A DNA stretch of 64,000 bases from positions 250,838 to 314,837 of IMG/VR virus record IMGVR_UViG_3300044712_000810. One strand, 5' to 3'. The notes below the pieces were generated by a model. The model saw nothing but the letters and a program-made list of their open reading frames with translations, searched no databases and was not told where the DNA came from. The position numbers and the translations under genes are program-made. Below, in pieces: positions 2,763-63,436 of this stretch; position 1 is the stretch's first letter; each line of letters starts with the position of its first letter.

Positions 2763-4724
2763 ATGATCTCCTCAGTTAACCTTAGCGCAATACCATTTCA
2801 ATCAAACACTGACAGTACCCGACTTCAAATGGCAGCCAAGCAATTGGCACAGAGTTTATCACATAGGAATTGTGAAGTTCCTTATGTAATTGGTAAAGAT
2901 TATAATTGTCTTTCTGATAACAGTCCAATCGGTTTATTATTTGCCGAAGATTCGGGCACTGTTTATTATAATAGAGATGATGTACTCATTTATCATTATG
3001 AAACTTTAAATAAATTGGAAGTAAAGTCGATTCCACCAATTAAAAAGACTCATGGAATTTATGCTAGTAGCTTAAGATCTTCACTTCCAGTAAATATGAA
3101 GTTTAATAAAGGTGATATTCTTTATGAATATGACTGTTTTAAAAATGGTATTCCAAGTATTGGCTATAATGCATTCTCTGCAATGATGCCTTGTTTTGGA
3201 TTTAACCATGAAGATAGTATTTTAATTTCTGAAAGTTTTGCAGAAAAAACTAGAGCAAATTTTGTTGATAAAGTTTATGTTCCGATTTATGAATATACTT
3301 TATTGCAACAACTATATGATCCTTCAACAAACCATTTTGGATTCTTTCCAAACATTGGTGAAGAAATCAAAAATAGTTTAATTTGTTGCACACTAACACC
3401 TAAAATTACTGATAACATGAAATATGGCGCACATGCCAATATGAAAAACAAAATGATGCTATTACTTAAATCTATGAACTTATCTGATTTACTTAGTATT
3501 CAAAACTCTTTACCAAACATGAACGTTGAAAAGATCAAAAGTAAACTTGAACATGGTAAAGTATCTGGTATTAAAATTCATAAACTTATGGATAACGTAA
3601 AGTTATTGGATAAGCGTTTACAAACTGTTCTTGATGGTTTATATAAACTATACACAAACGTTTTTATTGATGCATATCATGAACTTGAAACAAAGTTCAT
3701 GCAAGATGTAGCAAAAGATGTATTACGTCGTCACTATGTTTACAAAGATAAAGATAGTGTTCGAGGTAAATTAGATCTAAAAAACGTTGCATATGTATTG
3801 GAAATTGAAGTTACCGATGAGTGTCAATCACATGTTGGTGATAAATTTGCAAATCGTTATGCAAACAAAGGTGTAGTATCATTGGTATTTCCAGATGATA
3901 TTGCACCAATTGCAGTACAATCAAATAAACCGGTTGATATTATATTTAACCCCTTTGGTGTATTCTCACGTATGAACCTTGGACAATTAGTTGAAGGTAT
4001 CGTATCTAAAAACGTAATGCATTGTGATAGTTATATCAAAGAAGGAAATAAAAAAGATCTTAAAGCTTCTATCTGGTGGTTAAATGAATATATCATTAAA
4101 AACCTTAATGATATGGAATATTACAATCGTGTAAATTCAGAAGTGATTGCCAGATTGGATGAACCAAAGTTTAAAGAACAATTCATTGAAGACGTTAAAC
4201 AACATAACCTTTTCATTGAAGCGCCAACATTTGGTGAAATTAATGTTCGTAATATTCTTAAAAATGGTGTAAATCCAAACGAACAAGTATATATTAAGAA
4301 AGAATTTCTTCAATATATGAAAGACAAACTGAAATGTAATATTAATATGCCAATTCAGGATGTCGTATTGCCAAATATTTATTGTGCGCCGATGTATATT
4401 GAAAAATTATATAAATTGGCTAACAAACTTATTACGGCCCGAGATCTTGGTCCAATTAAAAGTATTACTGGACAACCAAAACGTGGACGCGCAAATGAAG
4501 GTGGATCACGTCTTGGACAGATGGAACTTGAAGGTATTCTTGCACATGGATGTGAAAGAACACTTAAAGAGTTCTTGACAGTTAAATCAGATCAACTTGA
4601 TGCAAAACGTGACTTGATTATGCAGTTAATGAAAACTGGTAATTATCGTATGCGCGATGAATATGGTGCATCTGGTAGAACAAAGAAAGTTGTTGACACA
4701 CTTTTACACTTCCTGCGAGAATAA
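2763..4724 (+). CDS. rpoB: multi-subunit RNA polymerase beta subunit, C-terminal half
   Basis: GDKFANRYANKGVV, PVDIIFNPFGVFSRMNLGQ, TGQPKRGRANEGGSRLGQME match conserved beta regions. Confidence 0.93.
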   Translation: MISSVNLSAIPFQSNTDSTRLQMAAKQLAQSLSHRNCEVPYVIGKDYNCLSDNSPIGLLFAEDSGTVYYNRDDVLIYHYETLNKLEVKSIPPIKKTHGIYASSLRSSLPVNMKFNKGDILYEYDCFKNGIPSIGYNAFSAMMPCFGFNHEDSILISESFAEKTRANFVDKVYVPIYEYTLLQQLYDPSTNHFGFFPNIGEEIKNSLICCTLTPKITDNMKYGAHANMKNKMMLLLKSMNLSDLLSIQNSLPNMNVEKIKSKLEHGKVSGIKIHKLMDNVKLLDKRLQTVLDGLYKLYTNVFIDAYHELETKFMQDVAKDVLRRHYVYKDKDSVRGKLDLKNVAYVLEIEVTDECQSHVGDKFANRYANKGVVSLVFPDDIAPIAVQSNKPVDIIFNPFGVFSRMNLGQLVEGIVSKNVMHCDSYIKEGNKKDLKASIWWLNEYIIKNLNDMEYYNRVNSEVIARLDEPKFKEQFIEDVKQHNLFIEAPTFGEINVRNILKNGVNPNEQVYIKKEFLQYMKDKLKCNINMPIQDVVLPNIYCAPMYIEKLYKLANKLITARDLGPIKSITGQPKRGRANEGGSRLGQMELEGILAHGCERTLKEFLTVKSDQLDAKRDLIMQLMKTGNYRMRDEYGASGRTKKVVDTLLHFLRE

Positions 4725-11998: not shown

Positions 11999-12070
11999 GG
12001 TATACGTAATCGGATGTAAAACCGACATGTGTTTCATTAAAAACAACTGAAAAACAGGAAGGAGACAATC

Positions 12071-12691
12071 ATGGCCGAAGTGTTGAACCTGACCAAAGGC
12101 GAAAACATCTCTCTCGACAAAACCGCTGACCAGCTGACCAACATCTTCGTCGGTCTGGGCTGGAACCCGCAGAAGGGTGCCGGCGCTGATTTCGACCTGG
12201 ACGCCACGGTCTTGTGTCTCACCAAGGAAGGCAAGGCCCGCAACGCGGCTGACATGTGCTACTTCGGCAAACTGAGCCTGTACGACGGCGTCATCAAGCA
12301 CTCCCCCGACGATCTCACCGGAGGCTCGTCCGACGACGGCGACGACGAGATCATCACCTTCGATCTGACCAAGATGCCGGCCGATGTGGCCGAAGCCATC
12401 GTTGCGGTCACCATCTACCAGGCCAAACAGCGCGGCCAGACCTTCGGACAGGTCGACAATGCCTACATTCGCGTTGGCACCGCCGACGTGAAGGGCAACT
12501 TCGAGCTGGAAAACGTGAAGGTCCTCGCCAAGTTCGACCTCACCGAGAACGCCTCCGGCGCCTCCGCCGTCATCATGGCCAAGCTGTACAAGACGGACGA
12601 GGGCGAGTGGAAGTTCAAGGTCATCGAGGAAGTCTTGAAGGACTTCGAGATCTCGCACCTGGCCGATCGCTACGGCGTCATGCACAAGTAA
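12071..12691 (+). CDS. terD: TerD family stress protein
   Basis: LTKGENISL, VGLGW, FDLDA, D.LTG...GDDE, FGQVDNAYIR, EWKF. Confidence 0.93.
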   Translation: MAEVLNLTKGENISLDKTADQLTNIFVGLGWNPQKGAGADFDLDATVLCLTKEGKARNAADMCYFGKLSLYDGVIKHSPDDLTGGSSDDGDDEIITFDLTKMPADVAEAIVAVTIYQAKQRGQTFGQVDNAYIRVGTADVKGNFELENVKVLAKFDLTENASGASAVIMAKLYKTDEGEWKFKVIEEVLKDFEISHLADRYGVMHK

Positions 12692-12698
12692 CACCTGT

Positions 12699-12724
12699 GG
12701 GGTCGGCTCGAAAGAGTCGGCCCC
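12699..12724 (+). terminator. hairpin/terminator
   Basis: GGGGTCGGCTC-GAAA-GAGTCGGCCCC-TTT. Confidence 0.6.
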
Positions 12725-12742
12725 TTTCTACTGGAGACACAA

Positions 12743-13678
12743 ATGCAACACTACTCGTTCGCGAACATTTTGATCTTTGGATTGTGCGTAGTTTTAGCAC
12801 TTTTCATTGATCTCCACACTCACAAAAAGGACGAACCAATCAGCGTTAAAAGCGCTGCACTCTGGTCTGTCTTCTGGGTAGGTCTGGCGCTCCTGTTTTC
12901 CGTCTATATTGGCGCAACACACGGAGCCGATCAATCATCGCTATTCCTCGCCGGATATCTACTCGAGAAATCTCTCTCAGTGGACAATCTGTTCGTGTTC
13001 ATGGCGGTGTTTGCATCATTCGGAATTCAAGACAAATATCAGCACCGAATTCTATACTTCGGTATTATCGGTGCTCTCATCTTGCGATTTATCTTCATTG
13101 CCATCGGCAGCAGTTTCTTGCTCATTGCCGGAAAATGGGCATTAACAGCTTTTGCCTTATTCGTTTTGTGGTCCGCATGGAAAATGTGGAAATCCACGGA
13201 TGATGACAATGAAGAAATAGTCGATTACACGGATCATTGGTCTGTAAAAATCGCAAAAAAGTTCCTTCCGGTATATCCTCACCGAGACGGCCATAACTTC
13301 TTTCACAAAGGAGCTTGTACGCCGTTCTTCCTGTGTCTGATAGTAATCGAAGTCGCAGACGTAATGTTTGCATTCGACTCTGTTCCTGCCGTCATAGCAG
13401 TAACACAGGAACCATTCTTGGTATATACATCCAACATCTTCGCCATTCTCGGCTTGAGGTCAATGTACTTCTTGCTGTCAGCGGCTAAAAGATATCTCTG
13501 TCACCTTGAAAAAGCAGTTATCATCGTGCTGGTCTTCATCGGCGTCAAGATGCTTCTTGATGTCTTTGGGCTTGTCCACATTACTCCGGTGGCAAGCTTG
13601 ATCATCGTGGCAGCTGTACTCATCGGCGGCGTCATTTCGTCATTCTGTTACCCTGAAAAAGAAGAAATCACACAATAA
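12743..13678 (+). CDS. terC: TerC/Alx family membrane protein
   Basis: EKSLSVDNLFVF, DVMFAFDSVPA, SNIFAILGLRSMYF. Confidence 0.95.
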   Translation: MQHYSFANILIFGLCVVLALFIDLHTHKKDEPISVKSAALWSVFWVGLALLFSVYIGATHGADQSSLFLAGYLLEKSLSVDNLFVFMAVFASFGIQDKYQHRILYFGIIGALILRFIFIAIGSSFLLIAGKWALTAFALFVLWSAWKMWKSTDDDNEEIVDYTDHWSVKIAKKFLPVYPHRDGHNFFHKGACTPFFLCLIVIEVADVMFAFDSVPAVIAVTQEPFLVYTSNIFAILGLRSMYFLLSAAKRYLCHLEKAVIIVLVFIGVKMLLDVFGLVHITPVASLIIVAAVLIGGVISSFCYPEKEEITQ

Positions 13679-26878: not shown

Positions 26879-26947
26879 TTAAATTTATTCCTCGAAAGAG
26901 GAATAAGATACTCCGTAGCGACTGTCGCAAGTCGACGACTGCTACAA

Positions 26948-27103
26948 TGGGAGGTCTTTTAGGTTCCCTTTCAACCTCTTGAGGTTTTTGTCAAAATAAC
27001 ACTTTAGACTCCGAATCAAAAAGTGTTGCCGGACGCGAGGCGCCACCCTCACCCCTGATCTTTGACTACCTCTGCTGCTGGGAAAAAACTAACTGACCTC
27101 CCA
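26948..27103 (+). ncRNA. long-hairpin structured RNA
   Basis: Nested stems TGGGAGGTC/GACCTCCCA, TTCCC/GGGAA, GAGGT/ACCTC, GTCAAA/TTTGAC. Confidence 0.5.
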
Positions 27104-27143
27104 CCTTTTAACCTTCACCATAAACTCCAAAGGAGATAACAGA

Positions 27144-27320
27144 ATGGATGGAGCGCACCAAGAATCTACTGGCAAGAACAATTCACGGAAACAAGATTTT
27201 CCTTACCTCCGTGACAATCCTTTTGAATTTGGCTTTCATTTCGATGAAAGCCCTCTTTCTTTATGTTGTTACATGAACGAAGGATGTTCGTGGATTCCCA
27301 AAAGGAAGCCCTGTCAGTAA
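27144..27320 (+). CDS. small hypothetical protein (58 aa, not in ORF track)
   Basis: AAGGAG SD, ATG at 27144. Confidence 0.45.
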   Translation: MDGAHQESTGKNNSRKQDFPYLRDNPFEFGFHFDESPLSLCCYMNEGCSWIPKRKPCQ

Positions 27321-39909: not shown

Positions 39910-39984
39910 CTCTGTATAGCTCAGTGGCAGAGCTGGGAACTCTAAATTCCCCGGTCGCGAGTTCGAGTCTCGCTACAGAGGCCA
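39910..39984 (+). tRNA. amber suppressor tRNA (CTA anticodon)
   Basis: Perfect cloverleaf: CTCTGTA/TACAGAG, GGGAA-CT CTA AA-TTCCC, TTCGAGT T loop, G73-CCA. Confidence 0.92.
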
Positions 39985-40838: not shown

Positions 40839-42260
40839 ATGTTATGTCAAGACAACATTTTGGTTAATACTGATTCGTATAAATCTTCTCACTTCCTCCA
40901 ATACCCTCCTGGTACTGAGGTGGTGAGCAGTTATATCGAGTCACGTAACGCTGGCAGATGGCCTCGCACCATCTTTTTCGGTCTTCAGATGTTCATCAAA
41001 GAATATCTGCTCAGACCATTTACTCTTGCGGATATTGAATTCGCCAAAGATTTCTGGGAAATGCATGGCGAACCTTTCAATTTCGATGGTGCAAAATACA
41101 TCTATGATCAATATGGCGGATACCTTCCGGTCACCATTCAGGCGGTCAAGGAAGGAACAAATATTGAAACCAGTAACGTCCTTGTGCAACTGAGAAACAA
41201 TGGTGGTGAAAAAACCTCATGGATTACCAACTTCCTTGAAACTTCATTGCTTCGTGGTGTTTGGTATCCAACTTCAATTGCAACTCTCAGTTTCATGTGT
41301 AAGAAGATCATTTACAATGCTCTTCAACTCACAGCTGACAATCCTGATGCTGAAATTCTGTTTAAACTTCATGATTTCGGTTTCCGTGGAGTCTCTTCGT
41401 GGGAATCTGCCGCTATCGGCGGTTGTGCCCACTTGGTGAACTTCATGGGTTCTGATACAGTAGCAGGCGTTTTGGCAGCACGCAATTACTACAATGAAAA
41501 AATGGCTGGATTTAGCATTCCTGCATCTGAGCACAGCACGATTACATCGTGGGGTCCAGGTATGGAAGCAGAAGCATTCTTGAACATGATCAATCGTTTC
41601 GGAGGCAAAGGCAAGCTTTACGCTTGTGTGTCCGATTCGTATGATATTTGGAATGCCGTCGAAAACATCTGGCCATCTCTGAAAGACGCAATCATCGAGA
41701 AGGGCGGAACTCTTGTAGTTCGTCCCGATAGTGGAAATCCTGTAGCAGTTGTTGCAGGTGTCATTGAAAGACTTATGTCGAAGTTTGGATGGACTGAAAA
41801 CTCGAAAGGTTATCGTGTCCTTCCTGAATACATTCGCGTTATTCAAGGCGATGGAATCGATGAAGAATCAATTCGTGATATCTTACAAGAATTGCAATTC
41901 AGAAAGATCAGTGCATCAAACGTTGCTTTTGGCATGGGTGGTGCGCTTCTTCAACATCTGAATCGTGATACCCTTAGATTTGCAATGAAATGCAATAGCA
42001 TTAAGCGCAACGGTTCTTGGCAGGACGTAAGCAAAAATCCAGTAACGGATTCCGGAAAGGTATCTAAGGCAGGTCGTCTTGCCCTTATAAAAATCGATCC
42101 TGAAAAGGAAGGTCGCAGAGGCGAACCATACTTCAAGACCATCCGTGAGGATGAACTTGGAGATCGTGAAAATTGTCTCGAGACAGTTTTTGAAAATGGT
42201 GAACTGATGCGTGAACAGTCATTCTCTGAAATTCGTGAACTCGCAGCATCGAGTTTGTAA
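40839..42260 (+). CDS. nadV: nicotinamide phosphoribosyltransferase (Nampt)
   Basis: TDSYKSSH..QYP, KLHDFGFRG, SIPASEHS, VSDSYD, RPDSG, FGMGG. Confidence 0.95.
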   Translation: MLCQDNILVNTDSYKSSHFLQYPPGTEVVSSYIESRNAGRWPRTIFFGLQMFIKEYLLRPFTLADIEFAKDFWEMHGEPFNFDGAKYIYDQYGGYLPVTIQAVKEGTNIETSNVLVQLRNNGGEKTSWITNFLETSLLRGVWYPTSIATLSFMCKKIIYNALQLTADNPDAEILFKLHDFGFRGVSSWESAAIGGCAHLVNFMGSDTVAGVLAARNYYNEKMAGFSIPASEHSTITSWGPGMEAEAFLNMINRFGGKGKLYACVSDSYDIWNAVENIWPSLKDAIIEKGGTLVVRPDSGNPVAVVAGVIERLMSKFGWTENSKGYRVLPEYIRVIQGDGIDEESIRDILQELQFRKISASNVAFGMGGALLQHLNRDTLRFAMKCNSIKRNGSWQDVSKNPVTDSGKVSKAGRLALIKIDPEKEGRRGEPYFKTIREDELGDRENCLETVFENGELMREQSFSEIRELAASSL

Positions 42261-50251: not shown

Positions 50252-50497
50252 ATGGGTAATGCGGCAAAAAATATTGGATTTGTCTTAAATCAAGCTAAAA
50301 CAAAAATCATGGGTTTTATGACATGGACATCAAAAGAACCACACAAATTAATGATGTTTAAAGAATCGTGTTGTTTTTATGTAGATTCAGAGACGAATTT
50401 ACCAATGGTTAAGTGGGCTGATAGCTCGGGCAAGATATGGAAAGGACAATTACAGTTAAATAGTATTGTTCCTGATGGTCAAGTTGAGAGTGAATAA
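50252..50497 (+). CDS. hypothetical protein
   Basis: AGGAG SD. Confidence 0.65.
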   Translation: MGNAAKNIGFVLNQAKTKIMGFMTWTSKEPHKLMMFKESCCFYVDSETNLPMVKWADSSGKIWKGQLQLNSIVPDGQVESE

Positions 50498-50514
50498 TAT
50501 TTAATATTCATAAG

Positions 50515-50528
50515 TTTGATATAGAAAT
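50515..50528 (+). promoter_or_regulatory. recurrent promoter-like motif
   Basis: TTTGATATAGAAAT. Confidence 0.7.
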
Positions 50529-50535
50529 ATTAATG

Positions 50536-50716
50536 AAAGCTCCGGAGAGGCATCGCCCCACCCCACGCTGGCCCGGACATGATCTGACGCCATAGCGTAG
50601 CTTCGCCACAGCGTAACCCGATAGGCAGATTTGCACACGGGCATCGGCCATCGACGCTAACTGGCGATCTGGCACATCGCCTCTCCACTCGCTTGAGGGG
50701 ACCTTCGGGTCCCCTT
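50536..50716 (+). ncRNA. candidate small RNA A
   Basis: GC-rich; GGAGAGGC/GCCTCTCC closing stem; terminator GAGGGGACC-TTCG-GGTCCCCTT. Confidence 0.6.
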
Positions 50717-50739
50717 TCTACTTTTTTTGTTTTCTGTAT

Positions 50740-50753
50740 TTTGATATAGAAAT
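50740..50753 (+). promoter_or_regulatory. recurrent promoter-like motif
   Basis: TTTGATATAGAAAT. Confidence 0.7.
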
Positions 50754-50761
50754 AGTAAAGT

Positions 50762-50885
50762 ACGCATAATGGAAACGCCGGGATGCCTCCTTGGCTCTTG
50801 TGGGATTGGCTCACAAGGGTAATAAGGTCCGGTTGATCCATGCGTGGTTGGCGGGGTAGAGTCTGTATAGATTCCCCCGCTAACC
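50762..50885 (+). ncRNA. candidate small RNA B
   Basis: ACGCAT/ATGCGT closed hairpin domain, then terminator GGTTGGCGGGG/CCCCGCTAACC. Confidence 0.6.
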
Positions 50886-50912
50886 GATATTTATTTTTTT
50901 AATATTTACTTG

Positions 50913-50926
50913 TTTCATATAGAAAT
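50913..50926 (+). promoter_or_regulatory. recurrent promoter-like motif
   Basis: TTTCATATAGAAAT. Confidence 0.7.
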
Positions 50927-50937
50927 AGTTAATTAAA

Positions 50938-51120
50938 GAGTTCTGTTCAAAAAAAACAAAACTCATCTAAGTAGCACCACCCGAAGAAATTCGGTACTTA
51001 GATGAAACCACCACCTAAGCAGAACTCAGAGAGGCCTCCCTTCAACCTACAGCACCACCCTACTGCTAAAGAGGGAGCCTCAAGACAACAACCAGGACAG
51101 TTTCACGACTGCCCTGTTTT
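50938..51120 (+). ncRNA. candidate small RNA C with three CACCACC motifs
   Basis: GAGTTCTG/CAGAACTC, CATCTAAGTA/TACTTAGATG, CTCCCT/AGGGAG stems. Confidence 0.6.
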
Positions 51121-51144
51121 CATTTCTTTTTTTGGAGGATTTTT

Positions 51145-51333
51145 ATGGGATGGATTAGAGATATAGATTGTCCATTTTGTGAACATGAGTTCGAATGGGA
51201 AGTCTGGGAAAATGGTAAATGTCCAAAATGTGGTGAAGAATTTTATTGGTCAGAAGATTGCACTGAAGATTATTCAGATTGTTGGGATAGTTTATGGTGG
51301 AATAAATGGGATGAAGAAAGGAGAAATAAATGA
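51145..51333 (+). CDS. small acidic Trp-rich zinc-ribbon protein
   Basis: CPFC...CPKC; GGAGG SD; overlaps the beta' start. Confidence 0.7.
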   Translation: MGWIRDIDCPFCEHEFEWEVWENGKCPKCGEEFYWSEDCTEDYSDCWDSLWWNKWDEERRNK

Positions 51334-52631
51334 AACTTAATTTATTAGATATAAATGAGTTTGTGACTAAAAACAATGTTAGACAAGTAAGTACAGTTCG
51401 TGTATATGAACGTCCAAATAAACTTGATGAAACCGGTCTATTTAGTGAAGTAATCTTTGGTCGTATTGGTTCAAATGACCGTCGTAAACGCTTTGGTTAT
51501 ATTAATTTAAAATGTCGAGTATTACATCCAGAAACTTATAGTTTACTAGTTCGTTTAGATCCTTCAATCAGTAAGTTTATAATGCAAAAAGCAACTTATG
51601 AACTTAGTGAAAATGGTGAACTCATAGAATCTGAAAATGGTGTTAATGGTGTATATAATCTTGTTGAATTCTTACCAAAAATGAAATTTGATAAGTTCAA
51701 GAATCAAGAAATTGCAAAATTTGTAAAAAAGAATCTTGATAAAATTATCATTGATAAAATTCTAGTTTTACCTGCAGGTATTCGTGACTTAAAATTATCA
51801 AAGATATCTGGTAAATCTCAAGTACAATTTGCTGAAATTAATAAATTATATGAAGCTATTATTAAACAATCAAACTCAATTCCTGATGATTTGTCTAGTT
51901 TACCACAAGAATTCTCATCAAGTTTTGTTCAAACAATTCAAAGAAAAGTACTTGAAATAAATGAATGGATCAAATCAAAAATGAAAGGTAAGTCTGGTCT
52001 TATTCGTGGTGGACTACTTAAGAAAGTAATCGACTACTCCGCCCGTCTTATCATTGTTTCTGATCCGACTCTTAAATTAGGTCAACTTGGTTTACCTTGG
52101 CAAGTAGTACTTAAACTTTATGAACCATTTACTTTAAATTACTTTTTACATAAAGATCAAACTTCATTAGCGCTTATTCAAGATAATCTTGGCGCAAACA
52201 TGACACCAGATATTAATGATCTTAAAAGATTTATTCAAAAAATAAATGAAGATCCAACAAGCATTAGTGAACTATTAAAAGACCATCTTATTGCTGCTGC
52301 ACATGACATTAGTAAAGGTAAAACCATTTTATATAAACGTGACCCGGTTGAAGCTCGTGACAACTATATGGGCGCTGATGTTCGTGTTGATCGTGAATCT
52401 AGTGTTGCACGTATGAATCCACTTGATCTTCCAAGATGCGGTGGTGACTTTGACGGTGACCAGATTGCTATATTCCCACTATTTACAAAAGAAGCAAATG
52501 CAGAAGCAAGTGCGAAGTTACATCCATCAAATTCAAAAGCAATGTGGACAAGTTCTGTAAGTTTAAGCAGACAACCATATTTCTTACAACTTGATGCAGC
52601 AACAACTCTTTATGCAATTACTAAGGAGTAA
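51330..52631 (+). CDS. rpoC: RNA polymerase beta' subunit, N-terminal part with catalytic motif
   Basis: GLFSEVIFG, RFGYINL, KGKSGLIR...K..DYSAR, GGDFDGDQ. Confidence 0.93.
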   Translation: MKLNLLDINEFVTKNNVRQVSTVRVYERPNKLDETGLFSEVIFGRIGSNDRRKRFGYINLKCRVLHPETYSLLVRLDPSISKFIMQKATYELSENGELIESENGVNGVYNLVEFLPKMKFDKFKNQEIAKFVKKNLDKIIIDKILVLPAGIRDLKLSKISGKSQVQFAEINKLYEAIIKQSNSIPDDLSSLPQEFSSSFVQTIQRKVLEINEWIKSKMKGKSGLIRGGLLKKVIDYSARLIIVSDPTLKLGQLGLPWQVVLKLYEPFTLNYFLHKDQTSLALIQDNLGANMTPDINDLKRFIQKINEDPTSISELLKDHLIAAAHDISKGKTILYKRDPVEARDNYMGADVRVDRESSVARMNPLDLPRCGGDFDGDQIAIFPLFTKEANAEASAKLHPSNSKAMWTSSVSLSRQPYFLQLDAATTLYAITKE

Positions 52632-52634
52632 AAC

Positions 52635-54578
52635 ATGTCAGAAGATCTATTTAATGAAATAATGGGATTCACAGTTGATCCACATCGTATTCAACAAACA
52701 TCAATGAATCAACCACAACAAGGATATATTGCACCAACAACAATGCAACAACATGATAGACAAGACTTTGGTATTGAATTTTCACATTGCGCAACAATGG
52801 AACCATGGCAACGTAGAATTTCTGACGTTTTAAAACATGGTAAAGATGTATATGTTGTTGCTGCACCAGGAGGTGGTAAAACACTTCCAGTATTTTGTCA
52901 CTGGACAAATAATATTCTTAATTTAAATACAATGATGACTGGCCCAGCAAACGATAAAGCATATACAGAATGTGTAAAAAATATATTTTTGGAACCTAAT
53001 AAAATACCAAAAATCCTATTCTTAGTTCCAACAAGATCACTCGCAATGCAAACAGAACAAGAAGTTCGTGCTGTATTTGGTGATATTATATCACAAACAA
53101 TGAATCGATTTTTAAAAGTAACACAATTTGAAGAATCGATTGATAGTGAAACTTTTGGACCATCCGCACCGGGACATTATACTCCTCATGATGCAGCACA
53201 AAGAGCTTATAATAACAATTTACAAAGACAAATATTTGAAAAACTTGGCAATAGCAATTTAATAATGATGATGACTGAAATTGCCAGACTTGCGGAAGAA
53301 CGTCGAAGTGCAACAAACGATTATGAAAAATCAAGAATTCGAAATATAATCGATTCATATAAACGTCAATTTAAACAAGAATTAATTGAATCTTTAAGAA
53401 ATTATATGAATGGAAATCTGTTACGAGTAAAAACTGGCGACTATAATATTGATGGAAATAATGCATTAGTTCATATTTCTATTTATGAATCCGCAGTAAA
53501 TATAGTTAATAATATGTCTAACCTAGGATTAATTATTATTGACGAAGCGCACTTAATTCAAAAGTCAGGTGAAATTGGCGACGAATCACGTAATAGACAA
53601 ATAGCAGAAGCATTATATACAGTTCTACATAAATTAAAAGGTAGTAAAACAAATATAGTTTTACTATCTGGAACTGAACATCCAGAAAGTGCACAAGAAA
53701 TCATTAAATATTTAAATCATTGTTTTGGAAGAAACTTTGAAAAATCTGATGCACTTATTCAAAGTTCCAGTGGAAACAGATCACAATTAAGTATTGTTCC
53801 AGATGATAGTTTGATGAATGATTCAAAACTTGTCGATATCGTCGTCAACGCTGTAAGGAAAAAAGATTGGGGTGAATTAATTGTATTATTTTCTGCAAGA
53901 AAAATTGTAAAAATTGCAGAAGAAGCAATTAAAAAATTAGGAACAAGAGATTTAAAAACTGTAAATACTAATGTTCAGTATGGTCATCAATTTACTAGTA
54001 TTTATGGTAATATAGAAAAACAAGCTCCATCAATGTCAATATCAAGAAATGATGCACATGCTATTTCACAACCAAAACCAGAATTATCTGATGCCTCAAA
54101 TATTAAAGATCCACTATTACGCGCATGTGTATCCGCTGGTTTTGGTTTTTATTTCCGTAATATGCCAGATGGTGGTGGCGAAGTAAGTGACAACGATAAG
54201 TTTATTGTAAGTAAATTATTTAAAGATAAAAAAATACACGCAATGCTCGCAACAGACGGTGTTGGTATTGGAGTTAATATTGACGTTAAACGTATTTATA
54301 TTCCAAGAATTGAAAAATTCGAAGCTATAATTGGTGATAATAAAGAAATTCCATTACGTGACTTAGCACAAATACTTAACAGAGCTGGTCGTGGTAAAAT
54401 TCCATTCGCATCAATATTTACACCATCAGGAAATGTTGAAATGGTAAGATCTGCATTATCAGCTACTGCAGAACAATTCAATGTTGTCCCCGCATATAGT
54501 AAAATTGGTTTTGGAATGATATGTCATAAGTTCGAAGCCTTCTATAGTATGTGGAAAGAAATGTCTGTCAAATTTTAA
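52635..54578 (+). CDS. SF2 DEAH-box helicase (Ski2-like)
   Basis: APGGGKT, VPTRSLA, IIDEAH, LSGT, GVNI, QILNRAGR. Confidence 0.9.
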   Translation: MSEDLFNEIMGFTVDPHRIQQTSMNQPQQGYIAPTTMQQHDRQDFGIEFSHCATMEPWQRRISDVLKHGKDVYVVAAPGGGKTLPVFCHWTNNILNLNTMMTGPANDKAYTECVKNIFLEPNKIPKILFLVPTRSLAMQTEQEVRAVFGDIISQTMNRFLKVTQFEESIDSETFGPSAPGHYTPHDAAQRAYNNNLQRQIFEKLGNSNLIMMMTEIARLAEERRSATNDYEKSRIRNIIDSYKRQFKQELIESLRNYMNGNLLRVKTGDYNIDGNNALVHISIYESAVNIVNNMSNLGLIIIDEAHLIQKSGEIGDESRNRQIAEALYTVLHKLKGSKTNIVLLSGTEHPESAQEIIKYLNHCFGRNFEKSDALIQSSSGNRSQLSIVPDDSLMNDSKLVDIVVNAVRKKDWGELIVLFSARKIVKIAEEAIKKLGTRDLKTVNTNVQYGHQFTSIYGNIEKQAPSMSISRNDAHAISQPKPELSDASNIKDPLLRACVSAGFGFYFRNMPDGGGEVSDNDKFIVSKLFKDKKIHAMLATDGVGIGVNIDVKRIYIPRIEKFEAIIGDNKEIPLRDLAQILNRAGRGKIPFASIFTPSGNVEMVRSALSATAEQFNVVPAYSKIGFGMICHKFEAFYSMWKEMSVKF

Positions 54579-55065: not shown

Positions 55066-55512
55066 ATGGATTTAGAAACAGCAATAGCATTAGCAGTCGT
55101 TGCACATAAAGGTCAAGTTGATAAGGCTGGAAAGCCATATATTCTCCATCCTTTGCGTGTAATGAATAAACTTGAAGATGAATATGATATGATTACCGGA
55201 GTACTTCACGATACTGTTGAAGATTGTGATGTTACTCTTGATGATTTACGTAAAGCAGGATTTCATGAAGATATCGTATATGCTGTTGACTGTGTAAGTC
55301 GAAGAACAGGCGAATCATATAAAAATTTTATTGGTCGTGTAATGACCGATAAACGCGCAATTCGAGTAAAAATTGCAGACATTGAAGATAACCTTCAAGT
55401 TTGCAGAATGGCTATGATTGATAGTGAAAAGTTTTCCAAATTCACTAACAACATCAAAATGTATGTTGAATCTTATACGAAACTAAAAGAACGGCTAAAA
55501 CTTTTAAAGTGA
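55066..55512 (+). CDS. HD-domain (p)ppGpp-hydrolase-like protein (RelA/SpoT HD, small type)
   Basis: AH.GQ.DK.GKPYILHP, LHDTVED, VKIADIEDN. Confidence 0.85.
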   Translation: MDLETAIALAVVAHKGQVDKAGKPYILHPLRVMNKLEDEYDMITGVLHDTVEDCDVTLDDLRKAGFHEDIVYAVDCVSRRTGESYKNFIGRVMTDKRAIRVKIADIEDNLQVCRMAMIDSEKFSKFTNNIKMYVESYTKLKERLKLLK

Positions 55513-55749: not shown

Positions 55750-56403
55750 GTGAAGAGAGAACTTATTTTGGCAGTAAAAGAATCAGATATTAAATTACCC
55801 GCGAACGGGTTTACATTAATTACGGAAGAAAATACAATTGAACTTGATGAAACAAACACATGGTTTGGTCCTAGATGCATTTTAGAAAATGATACGAGTT
55901 TCCGACAAATCATTCCATACGCGATTATCAAGAAAGATGATAGTATTCTAATGTATGAACGTCAAGTAACTGGCGGTGAAGCCCGTTTACATGGTCTTAA
56001 ATCTATCGGTTTCGGTGGTCACGTAAACCTTCGTGACGACTTCCCAACTGATGATGGAATGTTCGATGCAGAATATGTAATTCCTGAAAATTTTGTATAT
56101 AGTGCATATGCGAGAGAATTATATGAAGAATTGGGAGCTAATATATTTGAATACGTCAGTAATGTCAATAGCGTTGGATACATTCACTACGCTAACGATT
56201 CTGATGTTGATGATGTAAATAAAGTTCATATGGGTATTGTATTTATTGTTGATTTATCATCTGAGAGTGATGAAGAAACTATCTCTGCAGATGAACTTGA
56301 AATCGGCAAATGTACATGGGTTCCTATCTCAGAACTCGAATCACATATTCCTGATATGGAAATGTGGAGTAAAGAAGCAAGCAAATATTTGATCGGTCAA
56401 TAA
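55750..56403 (+). CDS. NUDIX-family phosphoesterase
   Basis: QIIPY, E.RLH...SIGFGGH, REL.EEL, VH.G. Confidence 0.85.
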   Translation: MKRELILAVKESDIKLPANGFTLITEENTIELDETNTWFGPRCILENDTSFRQIIPYAIIKKDDSILMYERQVTGGEARLHGLKSIGFGGHVNLRDDFPTDDGMFDAEYVIPENFVYSAYARELYEELGANIFEYVSNVNSVGYIHYANDSDVDDVNKVHMGIVFIVDLSSESDEETISADELEIGKCTWVPISELESHIPDMEMWSKEASKYLIGQ

Positions 56404-61636: not shown

Positions 61637-61645
61637 GTGGAAATA

Positions 61646-63436
61646 ATGGCAAGTTTATCATCAAATATAACTTTAGATGAGTTATATACAAAACTACGTA
61701 CAGGTTCAAAAATAACCGATAAAATATCATACAGTAGCAAAAAGACTGATGGAAAAGCAATGCGCATGTCCATTGGTAGAGTAATAGTTAATGAAATATT
61801 ACCTGAAGACTTTGAATTAGTCAACGAAGTACTTAATGCAAAAGTTCAAAGTAAAATATTTAAGAAACTATTTGATAAATATGGACCAAAACAAGCTGGT
61901 GATATATTATCGGAATTACAACTTGAAATGTTTAAAATGGCATCAATGATTCCAAGTTCATTTAATATTAATGGTCTTACATTTCCTGATGAATTTAAAG
62001 CCATGAAAGATGATTTTAAATCAAAAGCAAAAGACATGTCATTAAATGAATATAATAAAGAAACAGACAAACTAACAAAATACTTACTTGACTATACTGA
62101 TGGTCAAGACCTTCGTGTTAATAACTTAATGAAATCCGGTGTAAAAGGCGATCCCATTAGTGACTGGAAGAACTTAATGGTTGCCAAAGGTTTTGTTATT
62201 GATATTGAAGGAAATATTAAAGGCCCGATTCTGAATGGTGTGGCCGAAGGTTTTAGTCGGAAAGCTTATTATGATGCTGCGGCAGAAGCAAGACGTGACT
62301 TCTTCTATAAAAGTACAATGTCTGCGGAACCAGGTTATCTTGCACGTAAGATTGTTATGGCAAACTCAAACATCGTAATTGATCCTAAAACCAAAGATTG
62401 CGAAACAAAAAAATATTATGAATTATATGTCAATAATAAGAATAAGAATATTATTATTGGAAGAACATATAATAAGAATGGTAGATTAACTAAGATTACA
62501 GAAGATAATGTTGATGATTTAGTTAATAATCCAATAAAGTTAAGATCACCATTATACTGCAAAGCTGAAAATGGAATTTGTCAAACATGTTACGGTGATT
62601 TATTTAAATCATTAGATACATCTGCTATTGGTGTTCTTGCAGGTGGTGCGGTAAACAAAGTAGCACTTAACGATATGATGAAAATGAAACACAAAGCATC
62701 ACAAGTTAACGTTGTTGACATTGACTTTATTGATATTATCAAGAAATCTCGTCTTGATCTTAAAGAACTATCACAATATCTTGATATTGAAAAGAAAGAA
62801 ATCAAAGCAAAAGTCGAATTAAGTTTTACAATTGATAAGAATGATTATAAAGAAGAAACTGAATTTTTAGATTGCGGTGAATACTTCGCAACTCCTGGTA
62901 TGTTAGACTTTGAAGTTGGTATTCCACCAAATATTACATCATTTACATTACCATTTGCATTTAAATTAGATCTTTATAAACCACAAGATATTGAAGGCGA
63001 AGGTAAAATAATCAAATTGCATTATAAGCCAGGTGAAACTATTACCAAAATGAATATGTATGTTGAGGAAGTCGATCCAGGCGTTCTTAACAGACTATTT
63101 GATGGTGGTGCAAAATATATTAAAACACCTGAAGGTCTTGTTGAAATTATTAGTGGACGTATTCCAAGCGTTGACTTATGTCACATCGAAACCATTGTCG
63201 CAAACATGTTTAGACGTGCGGATGATGATTCTGAACCTTGTAGAAAACGTGGCGATTATAAAAACGCAGTAATATATGGTCAAAAGAAACTTCCATTTAT
63301 TACATCATGGTTAACAAGTTTAAGTTTCGAAAACGTAAATAAGGCTATTGAATACGGATTAATTTCCGGTAAACATGCTAACTTCGATCCTTTTGAAAAG
63401 ATCGTACTTGAAAAGTTTGGTGGAGGAGAAGTTTAA
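61646..63436 (+). CDS. rpoC: RNA polymerase beta' subunit, C-terminal part
   Basis: SIGRVIVNEILP, SGVKG, AEPGYLARK (bridge helix), LRSPLYC..GICQTCYG, SWL..LSFE. Confidence 0.9.
   Translation: MASLSSNITLDELYTKLRTGSKITDKISYSSKKTDGKAMRMSIGRVIVNEILPEDFELVNEVLNAKVQSKIFKKLFDKYGPKQAGDILSELQLEMFKMASMIPSSFNINGLTFPDEFKAMKDDFKSKAKDMSLNEYNKETDKLTKYLLDYTDGQDLRVNNLMKSGVKGDPISDWKNLMVAKGFVIDIEGNIKGPILNGVAEGFSRKAYYDAAAEARRDFFYKSTMSAEPGYLARKIVMANSNIVIDPKTKDCETKKYYELYVNNKNKNIIIGRTYNKNGRLTKITEDNVDDLVNNPIKLRSPLYCKAENGICQTCYGDLFKSLDTSAIGVLAGGAVNKVALNDMMKMKHKASQVNVVDIDFIDIIKKSRLDLKELSQYLDIEKKEIKAKVELSFTIDKNDYKEETEFLDCGEYFATPGMLDFEVGIPPNITSFTLPFAFKLDLYKPQDIEGEGKIIKLHYKPGETITKMNMYVEEVDPGVLNRLFDGGAKYIKTPEGLVEIISGRIPSVDLCHIETIVANMFRRADDDSEPCRKRGDYKNAVIYGQKKLPFITSWLTSLSFENVNKAIEYGLISGKHANFDPFEKIVLEKFGGGEV

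What the first reader, a model, noticed from the sequence alone, without database searches (positions are those of the whole stretch)
50938..51120. sRNA C displays three CACCACC motifs in unpaired positions (sponge-like architecture)
Seen: GCACCACCC (50974), ACCACCACC (51007) and GCACCACCC (51052) fall largely in a bulge, an internal loop and a hairpin loop between perfect stems (e.g. CATCTAAGTA/TACTTAGATG). Related C-rich runs occur in sRNA A (CCCCACCCCAC) and the 26948 RNA (GCCACCCTCACCCC). Known: CsrB-type RNAs titrate proteins by presenting repeated short motifs. Inference: a multivalent decoy for an RNA-binding protein, or seeds pairing with GGUGG-containing RNAs.
Basis: partly seen in the sequence, partly recalled or inferred. 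Interest (0 to 1): 0.62.

Follow-up and report, generated by a model that had tools for sequence, protein, structure and literature searches.

The report
Orphan jumbo-phage small RNA, three CACCACC loops
An uncultivated giant phage carries a roughly 190-base structured small RNA gene, with its own promoter and terminator, that shows the short motif CACCACC three times in predicted unpaired positions. It has no detectable relatives and no identifiable partner, so the idea that it acts as a sponge is untested and it is only moderately interesting.

Summary
CACCACC occurs at 50975, 51009 and 51053, and nowhere else in the window in this orientation except 17530. The copies sit in a 7-nt bulge, a 12-nt junction strand and a 9-nt hairpin loop of a strongly predicted fold (-58.4 kcal/mol, z -6.3), with mean unpaired probability 0.79-1.0.

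The unit lies behind the phage promoter-like motif TTTCATATAGAAATA, which also precedes tRNAs, sRNAs A and B and protein genes. It ends in a hairpin plus U-tract that abuts the ribosome-binding site of a Zn-ribbon/RNA polymerase beta'/helicase gene block. The host genome is a 315-kb, 31% GC jumbo phage with 27 tRNAs.

The repetition is only modestly beyond chance (about 1% of shuffles). There is no Rfam match and no homolog or paralog by nhmmer or a covariance model in about 1.3 Mb of related-phage loci. The closest relatives have unrelated protein genes at this position. Conservation and covariation therefore cannot be tested.

Nothing supports a CsrB-type protein sponge: there are only three sites, the motif differs and no binder is known. 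Phage translation starts in the window are not enriched for complementarity.

Best reading: a lineage-specific, moron-like sRNA, possibly also a leader, whose C-rich single strands act as pairing seeds like those of RoxS, FsrA and RsaE. Confidence is low.

The parts
50913..50929 (+). Phage promoter-like motif TTTCATATAGAAATAGT, with its core ATATAGAAATA at 50917-50927.
   Evidence: The 11-mer, allowing up to 1 mismatch, has 29 hits against 5.4 expected, 24 of them on the + strand. The same motif sits 9-19 nt before tRNA genes (25983, 26563, 26715, 44593). It also precedes sRNAs A and B and SD-ATG protein starts (11287; 49195 on the minus strand). The three sRNA promoters align over 41 nt (D1).
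50938..51027 (+). Domain 1. P1 is 50938-50947/51018-51027. An A-rich internal loop lies at 50948-50962. P2 is 50963-50973/50995-51005. The bulge GCACCAC is at 50974-50980. P2b is CCGAA/UUCGG with a GAAA loop at 50981-50994. The junction strand AACCACCACCUA is at 51006-51017.
   Evidence: MFE and centroid folds agree. The z-score is -6.3 against 200 dinucleotide shuffles. The inverted repeat is perfect (I4).
50975..50981 (+). CACCACC copy 1, in the bulge; its last C is paired.
   Evidence: Unpaired probability is 0.98-1.0 for CACCAC.
51009..51015 (+). CACCACC copy 2, in the junction strand between P2 and P1.
   Evidence: Unpaired probability is about 1.0 and 0.75-1.0 across contexts.
51031..51081 (+). 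Domain 2: a hairpin formed by GAGGC.CUCCC ... GGGAGCCUC, with an apical stem AGCA/UGCU and the 9-nt loop CCACCCUAC.
51053..51059 (+). CACCACC copy 3. Its first CA lies in the apical stem and CCACC in the hairpin loop.
   Evidence: Unpaired probability is 0.2-0.3 for CA and about 1.0 for CCACC.
51093..51133 (+). Terminator-like hairpin at 51093-51116 (9 bp with a 1x1 A/C internal loop), followed by the U-tract UUUUCAUUUCUUUUUUU at 51117-51133.
   Evidence: Folds. The mismatch explains why the strict scan reported this hairpin only on the minus strand, where it becomes a G-T pair. The modest stem suggests partial read-through, which is an inference.
51134..51333 (+). SD GGAGG (51134-51138) and ATG (51145) of a 62-aa Zn-ribbon gene. 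Its end overlaps the start of the RNAP beta' gene (51330-52631), which is followed by a DEAD-box helicase gene (52635-54578).
   Evidence: No copy of the promoter motif lies between 50927 and 54010. Any transcript reaching these genes therefore carries the sRNA C sequence as its leader.
50530..50895 (+). Sibling units sRNA A (about 50530-50716) and sRNA B (about 50755-50895). Each has the same promoter motif and a strong terminator.

Best explanation
The locus is a lineage-specific small RNA gene of about 190-200 nt, the third of three tandem promoter-RNA-terminator units. These were inserted, in the manner of phage morons (self-contained promoter-gene-terminator insertions), into a hypervariable spot just upstream of the non-virion RNA polymerase beta' gene of an uncultivated 315-kb jumbo phage.

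The phage polymerase starts transcription a few bases after TTTCATATAGAAATA. The RNA folds into two stable domains. Most transcripts stop at a modest hairpin plus U-tract, and the rest read through into the Zn-ribbon/RNAP beta'/helicase genes.

The three single-stranded CACCACC(C) elements are most likely redundant C-rich seed regions. [quoted passage not shown]

Shown: the sequence features and the predicted fold. Inferred: transcription, the ends of the RNA, accessibility in vivo and every functional step.
For: - Promoter motif: significantly enriched and strand-biased (29 hits against 5.4 expected). It precedes tRNAs, sRNAs A, B and C and protein genes at a constant short distance.
- Base composition: GC is 0.43-0.52 against a background of about 0.3.
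- Fold: -58.4 kcal/mol, z -6.3, with none of 200 shuffles as stable.
- 3' end: a hairpin plus a 17-nt U-rich tract.
- Coding: no Pfam or PHROG family for the only internal ORF, which also has no SD.
- Motif exposure: the motifs are highly accessible in the ensemble and across contexts.
- Repetition: an exact 10-mer repeat, and a triple 7-mer in only about 1% of shuffles.
- Precedent: multiple unpaired C-rich regions used for pairing are the documented working parts of B. subtilis RoxS and FsrA and S. aureus RsaE (PMC8216469, read).
- Lineage-specific insertion: relatives with 45-73% identical RNAP beta' have unrelated protein genes, or a TnpB, at this position. The upstream 331-aa gene has no homolog at all.
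Against: - No homolog or paralog was found, so there is no covariation or motif conservation.
- There are no expression data.
- The repetition is only modestly significant, and a C-rich, G-poor RNA leaves C-runs unpaired by default.
- The 106 translation-initiation regions in the window pair no better with the motif loops than random windows do (mean -7.3 against -7.2 kcal/mol).
- The one exact 9-nt complement (41936-41944, inside the NAMPT gene) is at chance level. GGTGGTG sites are mostly ordinary Gly-Gly codons.
- CACCACC cannot pair with the canonical GGAGG Shine-Dalgarno sequence used by this phage.
- The host is unknown, so host targets cannot be scored.
Confidence: 0.35

Rival explanations
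1. The structured RNA is a cis-acting 5' leader or attenuator of the Zn-ribbon/RNAP beta'/helicase genes. It sets how much transcription passes the terminator or how accessible the SD is. The repeated motifs would be binding sites for a regulatory protein, as in TRAP, HutP or PyrR-type attenuation, and the terminated sRNA would be a by-product.
For: The terminator's U-tract abuts the SD (51134-51138) and ATG (51145). No copy of the promoter motif lies between 50927 and 54010. The terminator stem is interrupted by a mismatch. The A-rich loop at 50947-50960 is 12/14 complementary to 51123-51136, which spans the U-tract and the first SD bases (I2).
Against: - Relatives have no leader of this kind. 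Their RNAP beta' genes follow tightly packed, unrelated protein genes.
- Sibling units A and B have the same promoter-RNA-terminator layout but are followed by another promoter, not a gene.
- No alternative antiterminator fold appears in the ensemble.
- The A/U complementarity is low-complexity.
Confidence: 0.2
2. The RNA is a multivalent protein decoy. It would titrate a host or phage RNA-binding protein that recognises single-stranded CACCACC or CCACC, for example a defence nuclease, Rho or a KH/cold-shock-type protein.
For: Three exposed copies sit on a rigid scaffold. The RNA has strong C>G skew, up to -0.35. Protein sponges with repeated short motifs are established (CsrB, RsmZ, CrcZ; general knowledge).
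Against: - There are only three sites, in three different structural contexts. Known sponges carry 5-22 similar hairpin-loop sites.
- The motif matches no known bacterial RNA-binding-protein consensus that I can name.
- No RNA-binding domain was found in the neighbouring genes or in the 20 larger window proteins scanned.
- There is no Rfam sponge family match.
- Conservation cannot be tested.
Confidence: 0.1
3. The RNA is real, but the triple motif has no function of its own. It would be a by-product of C-rich composition or of a small internal duplication, and the RNA works through its shape or other parts such as the A-rich loop.
For: Some 7-mer repeats three times in 1-3% of shuffles. With 55 C and 31 G, C-runs are left unpaired. 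No target or binder was found.
Against: The exact 10-mer repeat plus a third near-copy, all in loops rather than stems, is more ordered than composition alone predicts.
Confidence: 0.25
4. The region is not an RNA gene. It would instead be a short protein-coding ORF (51002-51166, 54 aa), or a DNA-level element such as iterons or operator repeats in front of the polymerase genes.
For: An ATG-initiated 54-codon ORF exists. There are three direct repeats spaced 34 and 44 bp apart.
Against: - The ORF has no SD, overlaps the next gene's start out of frame, and has no Pfam or PHROG match.
- The promoter motif, extensive helices, z-score and U-tract all point to an RNA.
- The repeat spacing is not helically phased, and the region is GC-rich rather than an AT-rich unwinding site.
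Confidence: 0.05

Closest known systems
RoxS/RsaE, FsrA and CsfG: Firmicute sRNAs with several C-rich regions
   Same: These are stand-alone sRNAs of about 100-200 nt with a Rho-independent terminator. They carry two to four unpaired C-rich elements that serve as redundant pairing seeds (PMC8216469).
   Different: Their motifs are CCCC or UCCC and pair with GGAGG-type ribosome-binding sites. CACCACC cannot pair with GGAGG. There is no Rfam match to RsaE or FsrA even at E<=10. This RNA is phage-encoded and an orphan, and no target was found.
CsrB/RsmY/RsmZ and CrcZ protein-sponge RNAs
   Same: A short motif is repeated in unpaired positions on a structured scaffold.
   Different: Those RNAs carry 5-22 copies of ANGGA (CsrA/RsmA) or about six A-rich CA motifs (Hfq/Crc), mostly in similar hairpin loops (from general knowledge). 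Here there are three copies of a different motif, in a bulge, a junction strand and a loop. There is no Rfam match and no cognate protein.
6C/B11 sRNA of Actinobacteria
   Same: It has C-rich loops that pair with G-rich mRNA sites.
   Different: 6C has two hairpins, each with a loop of at least six C (from general knowledge). There is no match here, and the low-GC phage context is different.
RosA/RsaI sponge RNAs
   Same: They are multivalent sRNAs with three accessible short repeats.
   Different: Their repeats are G-rich and soak up C-rich sRNAs. sRNA C has the opposite polarity and would be a client or mimic, not such a sponge. Only a minus-strand transcript would be G-rich, and no promoter motif supports one.
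Stable small RNAs of lytic phages (T4 RNAs C and D; predicted phiKZ sRNA)
   Same: They are phage-encoded, promoter-driven small structured RNAs of unknown function in tRNA-rich large phages.
   Different: The T4 species are co-transcribed with tRNAs (from memory, not tested). The single predicted phiKZ sRNA could not be confirmed by Northern blot (PMC8244752). There is no sequence relationship.

Membership tests
CsrB/Rsm-type protein sponge | Many (at least 5) GGA/ANGGA motifs, mostly in hairpin loops | tested here: not met
   The motif is CACCACC. There are three copies in three different contexts.
CsrB/Rsm-type protein sponge | Match to a curated covariance model | tested here: not met
   There is no Rfam hit at gathering score, and none relevant at E<=10 in 50300-51300.
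CsrB/Rsm-type protein sponge | A cognate RNA-binding protein that is titrated | not testable with these tools
   The host is unknown. No RNA-binding domain was found in the neighbours or in 20 larger window proteins.
C-rich-region sRNAs (RoxS/RsaE/FsrA) | Several unpaired C-rich elements on a terminator-ended sRNA | tested here: met
   Three C-rich elements have mean unpaired probability 0.79-1.0, followed by a terminator hairpin and U-tract. This rests on prediction only.
C-rich-region sRNAs (RoxS/RsaE/FsrA) | Sequence or structure homology to the family | tested here: not met
   No RsaE, FsrA or other sRNA model matched at E<=10.
C-rich-region sRNAs (RoxS/RsaE/FsrA) | Seeds pair with G-rich ribosome-binding regions of targets | tested here: inconclusive
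   Phage TIRs in the window are not enriched (mean -7.3 against -7.2 kcal/mol). Only two of 106 carry GGTGG upstream of the start. The host transcriptome and 250 kb of the phage are unavailable.
Riboswitch or attenuator leader | Conserved position upstream of the regulated gene in relatives | tested here: not met
   Thirteen related loci, and the 73%-identical L005, lack any comparable leader upstream of RNAP beta'.
Riboswitch or attenuator leader | Mutually exclusive terminator and antiterminator folds | tested here: not met
   The ensemble keeps one architecture in all contexts. Only a possible low-complexity A-loop/U-tract pseudoknot was seen.
Independent phage sRNA gene (moron-like unit) | Own promoter, non-coding structured body, own terminator, and lineage-specific presence | tested here: met
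   Transcription itself was not tested.

The most novel reading that the evidence does not exclude
sRNA C is a phage counter-measure RNA. On this reading it is a rigid scaffold displaying three single-stranded CACCACC elements. These contain the commonest tRNA 3'-terminal sequence, CACCA, and are complementary to GGUGG-type sites. The scaffold would act as a multivalent decoy for a host factor, for example a tRNA-end-directed defence nuclease or transferase, Rho, or G-rich regulatory RNAs. That would fit a phage that also carries 27 tRNAs and NAD-salvage genes.
Probability: 0.08. Interest if true: 0.75.

Novelty: new member of a known kind. Interest (0 to 1): 0.33.

Why it matters
Small RNAs of lytic and jumbo phages are almost unexplored. 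The phiKZ transcriptome study could predict only one and could not confirm it. This window holds three tandem, promoter-driven, terminator-ended structured RNAs beside the phage polymerase genes.

If they are expressed, they would be a clean entry point for studying RNA-based host takeover or anti-defence in an uncultivated jumbo-phage clade. They would also supply a defined phage promoter consensus. As it stands the element is an orphan with no partner, so its value is as a candidate for experiment, not as a finding about mechanism.

Tried and rejected
1. Rfam at gathering score over the whole window, and at E<=10 over 50300-51300, gave only tRNAs and noise.
2. blastn of 50400-51400 against 50,697 phage genomes gave no match.
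3. Synteny route. Relatives of RNAP beta' were fetched from IMG/VR, JGI metagenomes and Logan.
   - nhmmer over 1.4 Mb and a single-sequence covariance model over 1.04 Mb found only the query itself.
   - Upstream regions in the relatives are protein-coding and unrelated.
5. A promoter-plus-motif scan returned 26 hits against my rough expectation of about 23 by chance, and only the query itself matched the model.
6. A tandem-promoter scan for sRNA arrays returned 58 hits, none with a GC-rich structured insert apart from the query itself.
7. The upstream 331-aa protein has no homolog in 5.8 billion proteins.
8. Target hunting found nothing convincing.
   - Duplex scans of the window, of A/B/C against each other and of 106 TIRs showed nothing beyond chance.
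   - Three GGTGGTG sites in the NAMPT gene are explained by its higher G content and, for two of them, by Gly-Gly codons.
9. The minus-strand fold is also stable (z -4.9) but has no promoter motif or U-tract, so that strand was rejected.
10. Host inference from the high-GC TerD/TerC island found only 65-70% partial matches.
11. I noted short complementarities of the motif to conserved host RNAs recalled from memory: the 16S helix-34 region GGUGGUGC and the T-box GGGUGGU. I rejected them as evidence, because matches of 7-8 nt are expected by chance when many candidates are tried.
The genome-contig scan was not used.

Full report
**What is there**

AGCACCACCC is an exact 10-nt repeat (D5). The named stem is an 11/11 inverted repeat, 50963-50973/50995-51005 (I4).

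**Genomic context**

- The window is the last 64 kb of IMGVR_UViG_3300044712_000810, a 314,837-bp viral contig.
- It is about 31% GC outside islands and carries 27 tRNA genes, including a CUA-anticodon suppressor.
- It encodes split multisubunit RNA polymerase genes typical of jumbo phages: beta at 2763-4721, beta' N-half at 51330-52631 and a further beta' piece at 61637-63433.
- The beta' N-half is only about 27% identical to the nearest cultured phages, which infect Listeria, Staphylococcus and Bacillus.
- It is 45-53% identical to many metagenomic proteins and 73% identical to one 1.9-kb Logan contig.

**A transcription unit**

The 11-mer ATATAGAAATA, allowing up to one mismatch, occurs 29 times against 5.4 expected, and 24 of these are on the + strand. 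In extended form the motif is TTTcATATAGAAATArTA. It sits 9-19 nt upstream of four tRNA genes, about 20 nt upstream of SD-ATG protein starts, and in front of three consecutive GC-rich non-coding blocks:

| Unit | Approximate span |
|---|---|
| A | 50530-50716 |
| B | 50755-50895 |
| C | 50935-51133 |

The three promoter regions align over 41 nt and each ends in AAAG just before the first helix (D1). A and B end in strong GC-rich hairpins with U-tracts. C ends in a 9-bp hairpin with one A/C mismatch (51093-51116), followed by UUUUCAUUUCUUUUUUU.

That U-tract abuts the GGAGG/ATG of a 62-aa Zn-ribbon gene, which overlaps the RNAP beta' start. No further copy of the promoter motif occurs before 54010. 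Whatever else it does, the C sequence is therefore the 5' leader of any transcript that reaches these genes.

**Fold and accessibility**

The + strand folds at -58.4 kcal/mol, against -33.6 +/- 4.0 for shuffles (z -6.3).

- Domain 1: P1 closes an A-rich 15-nt internal loop. P2/P2b is a 16-bp helix interrupted by the bulge GCACCAC. A 12-nt strand, AACCACCACCUA, returns to P1.
- Domain 2: a hairpin with the loop CCACCCUAC.

MFE and centroid structures agree. Mean unpaired probabilities of the three 7-mers are 0.85, 1.0 and 0.79, and they change little with longer flanks. The minus strand also folds (z -4.9), but it lacks a promoter motif and a U-tract.

**Is it more than chance?**

Partly. Three copies of one 7-mer appear in 1.2% of shuffles of the 129-nt core, or in 3.1% when the poly-A run is included. 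With 55 C against 31 G, C-runs have little to pair with. Their exposure is therefore expected and is not independent evidence of function.

**Conservation**

None could be established.

- Rfam has nothing, and INPHARED phages have nothing.
- I fetched 114 loci (1.4 Mb) around RNAP beta' homologs from IMG/VR, JGI metagenomes and Logan.
- nhmmer with A, B and C and a covariance model of C, run over 69 of these loci plus the window (1.04 Mb), recovered only the query.
- In 13 related loci the polymerase gene is preceded by tightly packed, mutually unrelated small protein genes. In L006 a TnpB gene lies two genes upstream.
- In the closest relative (L005) a divergent protein gene starts 30 nt upstream. 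It is driven by the same ATATAGAAATA motif.
- The 331-aa gene upstream of the cluster has no homolog at all.
- Pattern scans of IMG/VR were either swamped by antisense Gly-rich coding repeats or returned chance-level hits. None of the 26 promoter-plus-motif hits matched the model except the query itself.

The A-B-C block, together with its orphan neighbours, is thus a lineage-specific insertion in a hypervariable spot. That fits moron-like acquisition. It argues against a conserved cis-regulator of the polymerase genes.

**Testing the interpretations**

*Protein sponge.* No positive evidence.
- There are only three sites in three different contexts, and the motif matches no known consensus.
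- No RNA-binding domain appears in the neighbours or in 20 larger window proteins.

- CACCACC cannot pair with the GGAGG sites this phage uses.
- The 106 translation-initiation regions pair no better than random windows.
- The sibling RNAs show no special complementarity.
- The only exact 9-nt complement (41936-41944) and the other GGTGGTG sites are mostly ordinary Gly-Gly codons.
- The host and 250 kb of the phage are unavailable.

*Leader.* The physical arrangement favours some read-through, and a low-complexity A-loop/U-tract complementarity exists (I2). However, no alternative fold appears and relatives lack any such leader.

*Coding or DNA-level readings.* Unlikely.

**Verdict**

This is a real, well-delimited candidate sRNA gene with a genuine but only modestly significant triple C-rich motif in predicted single strands. 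It works most like the C-rich-region sRNAs, but it belongs to no described family. The sponge label is not supported by anything beyond appearance.

I rate it a new member of a known kind, a phage-encoded regulatory-type sRNA, at interest 0.33. Its main value is as an experimental candidate, together with siblings A and B and the promoter consensus.

Noticed in passing
window 50530-50716 and 50755-50895: Two further orphan structured RNAs, A and B, stand in tandem with C. A is 64% GC with z -3.7, and B has z -5.6. Each has the same promoter motif and a strong terminator. Neither has an Rfam or nhmmer match.
   Followed up: partly
window-wide, e.g. 11257, 25954, 26691, 40305, 44572, 50519, 50744, 50917, 54593; also L005 72-82 (minus strand): There is a phage promoter-like consensus, TTTcATATAGAAATArTA. 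It has 29 hits against 5.4 expected, is strongly + strand biased, and precedes tRNAs, sRNAs and protein genes. The 11-mer core is conserved in the 73%-identical relative.
   Followed up: partly
window 39910-39984: This tRNA has anticodon CUA (an amber suppressor, labelled Pyl by ARAGORN). I did not check whether phage genes carry in-frame TAG codons.
   Followed up: no
window 12057-13675: A 59% GC island in a 31% GC genome encodes TerD (12071-12691) and TerC (12743-13675), which looks like a recent foreign acquisition. There are only 65-70% partial DNA matches to plasmid ter loci.
   Followed up: partly
window 40839-42257, 55066-55512, 55750-56403: Genes for NAMPT-family nicotinamide phosphoribosyltransferase, an HD-domain protein and a NUDIX protein are present. 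The set is reminiscent of phage NAD+ salvage against NAD-depleting defences.
   Followed up: no
window 50947-50960 vs 51123-51136: The A-rich internal loop of sRNA C is 12/14 complementary to its own terminator U-tract and the first SD bases. This could be a pseudoknot or 3'-tail capture, or it could be a low-complexity coincidence.
   Followed up: no
L005 1237-1476: In the closest relative, the RNAP beta' reading frame is interrupted by about 240 nt between residues 373 and 374, at the catalytic DxDGD motif. It may be an intron, an intein-like insert or an assembly artefact.
   Followed up: no
L006 2142-3416: A relative carries a TnpB (OrfB_IS605/Cas12f-like) gene two genes upstream of its RNAP beta' gene. 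In this phage the sRNA cluster sits upstream of the homologous gene. This marks the site as an insertion hotspot.
   Followed up: no
window 26879-27143: A 265-nt non-coding stretch lies after tRNA-Phe. It holds GCGCCACCCTCACCCC and CCTCCCACC and a terminator-like hairpin at its start. Its fold is ill-defined (z -3.6, MFE frequency 0.0002), and it may be a 5' UTR of the gene starting at 27145.
   Followed up: partly
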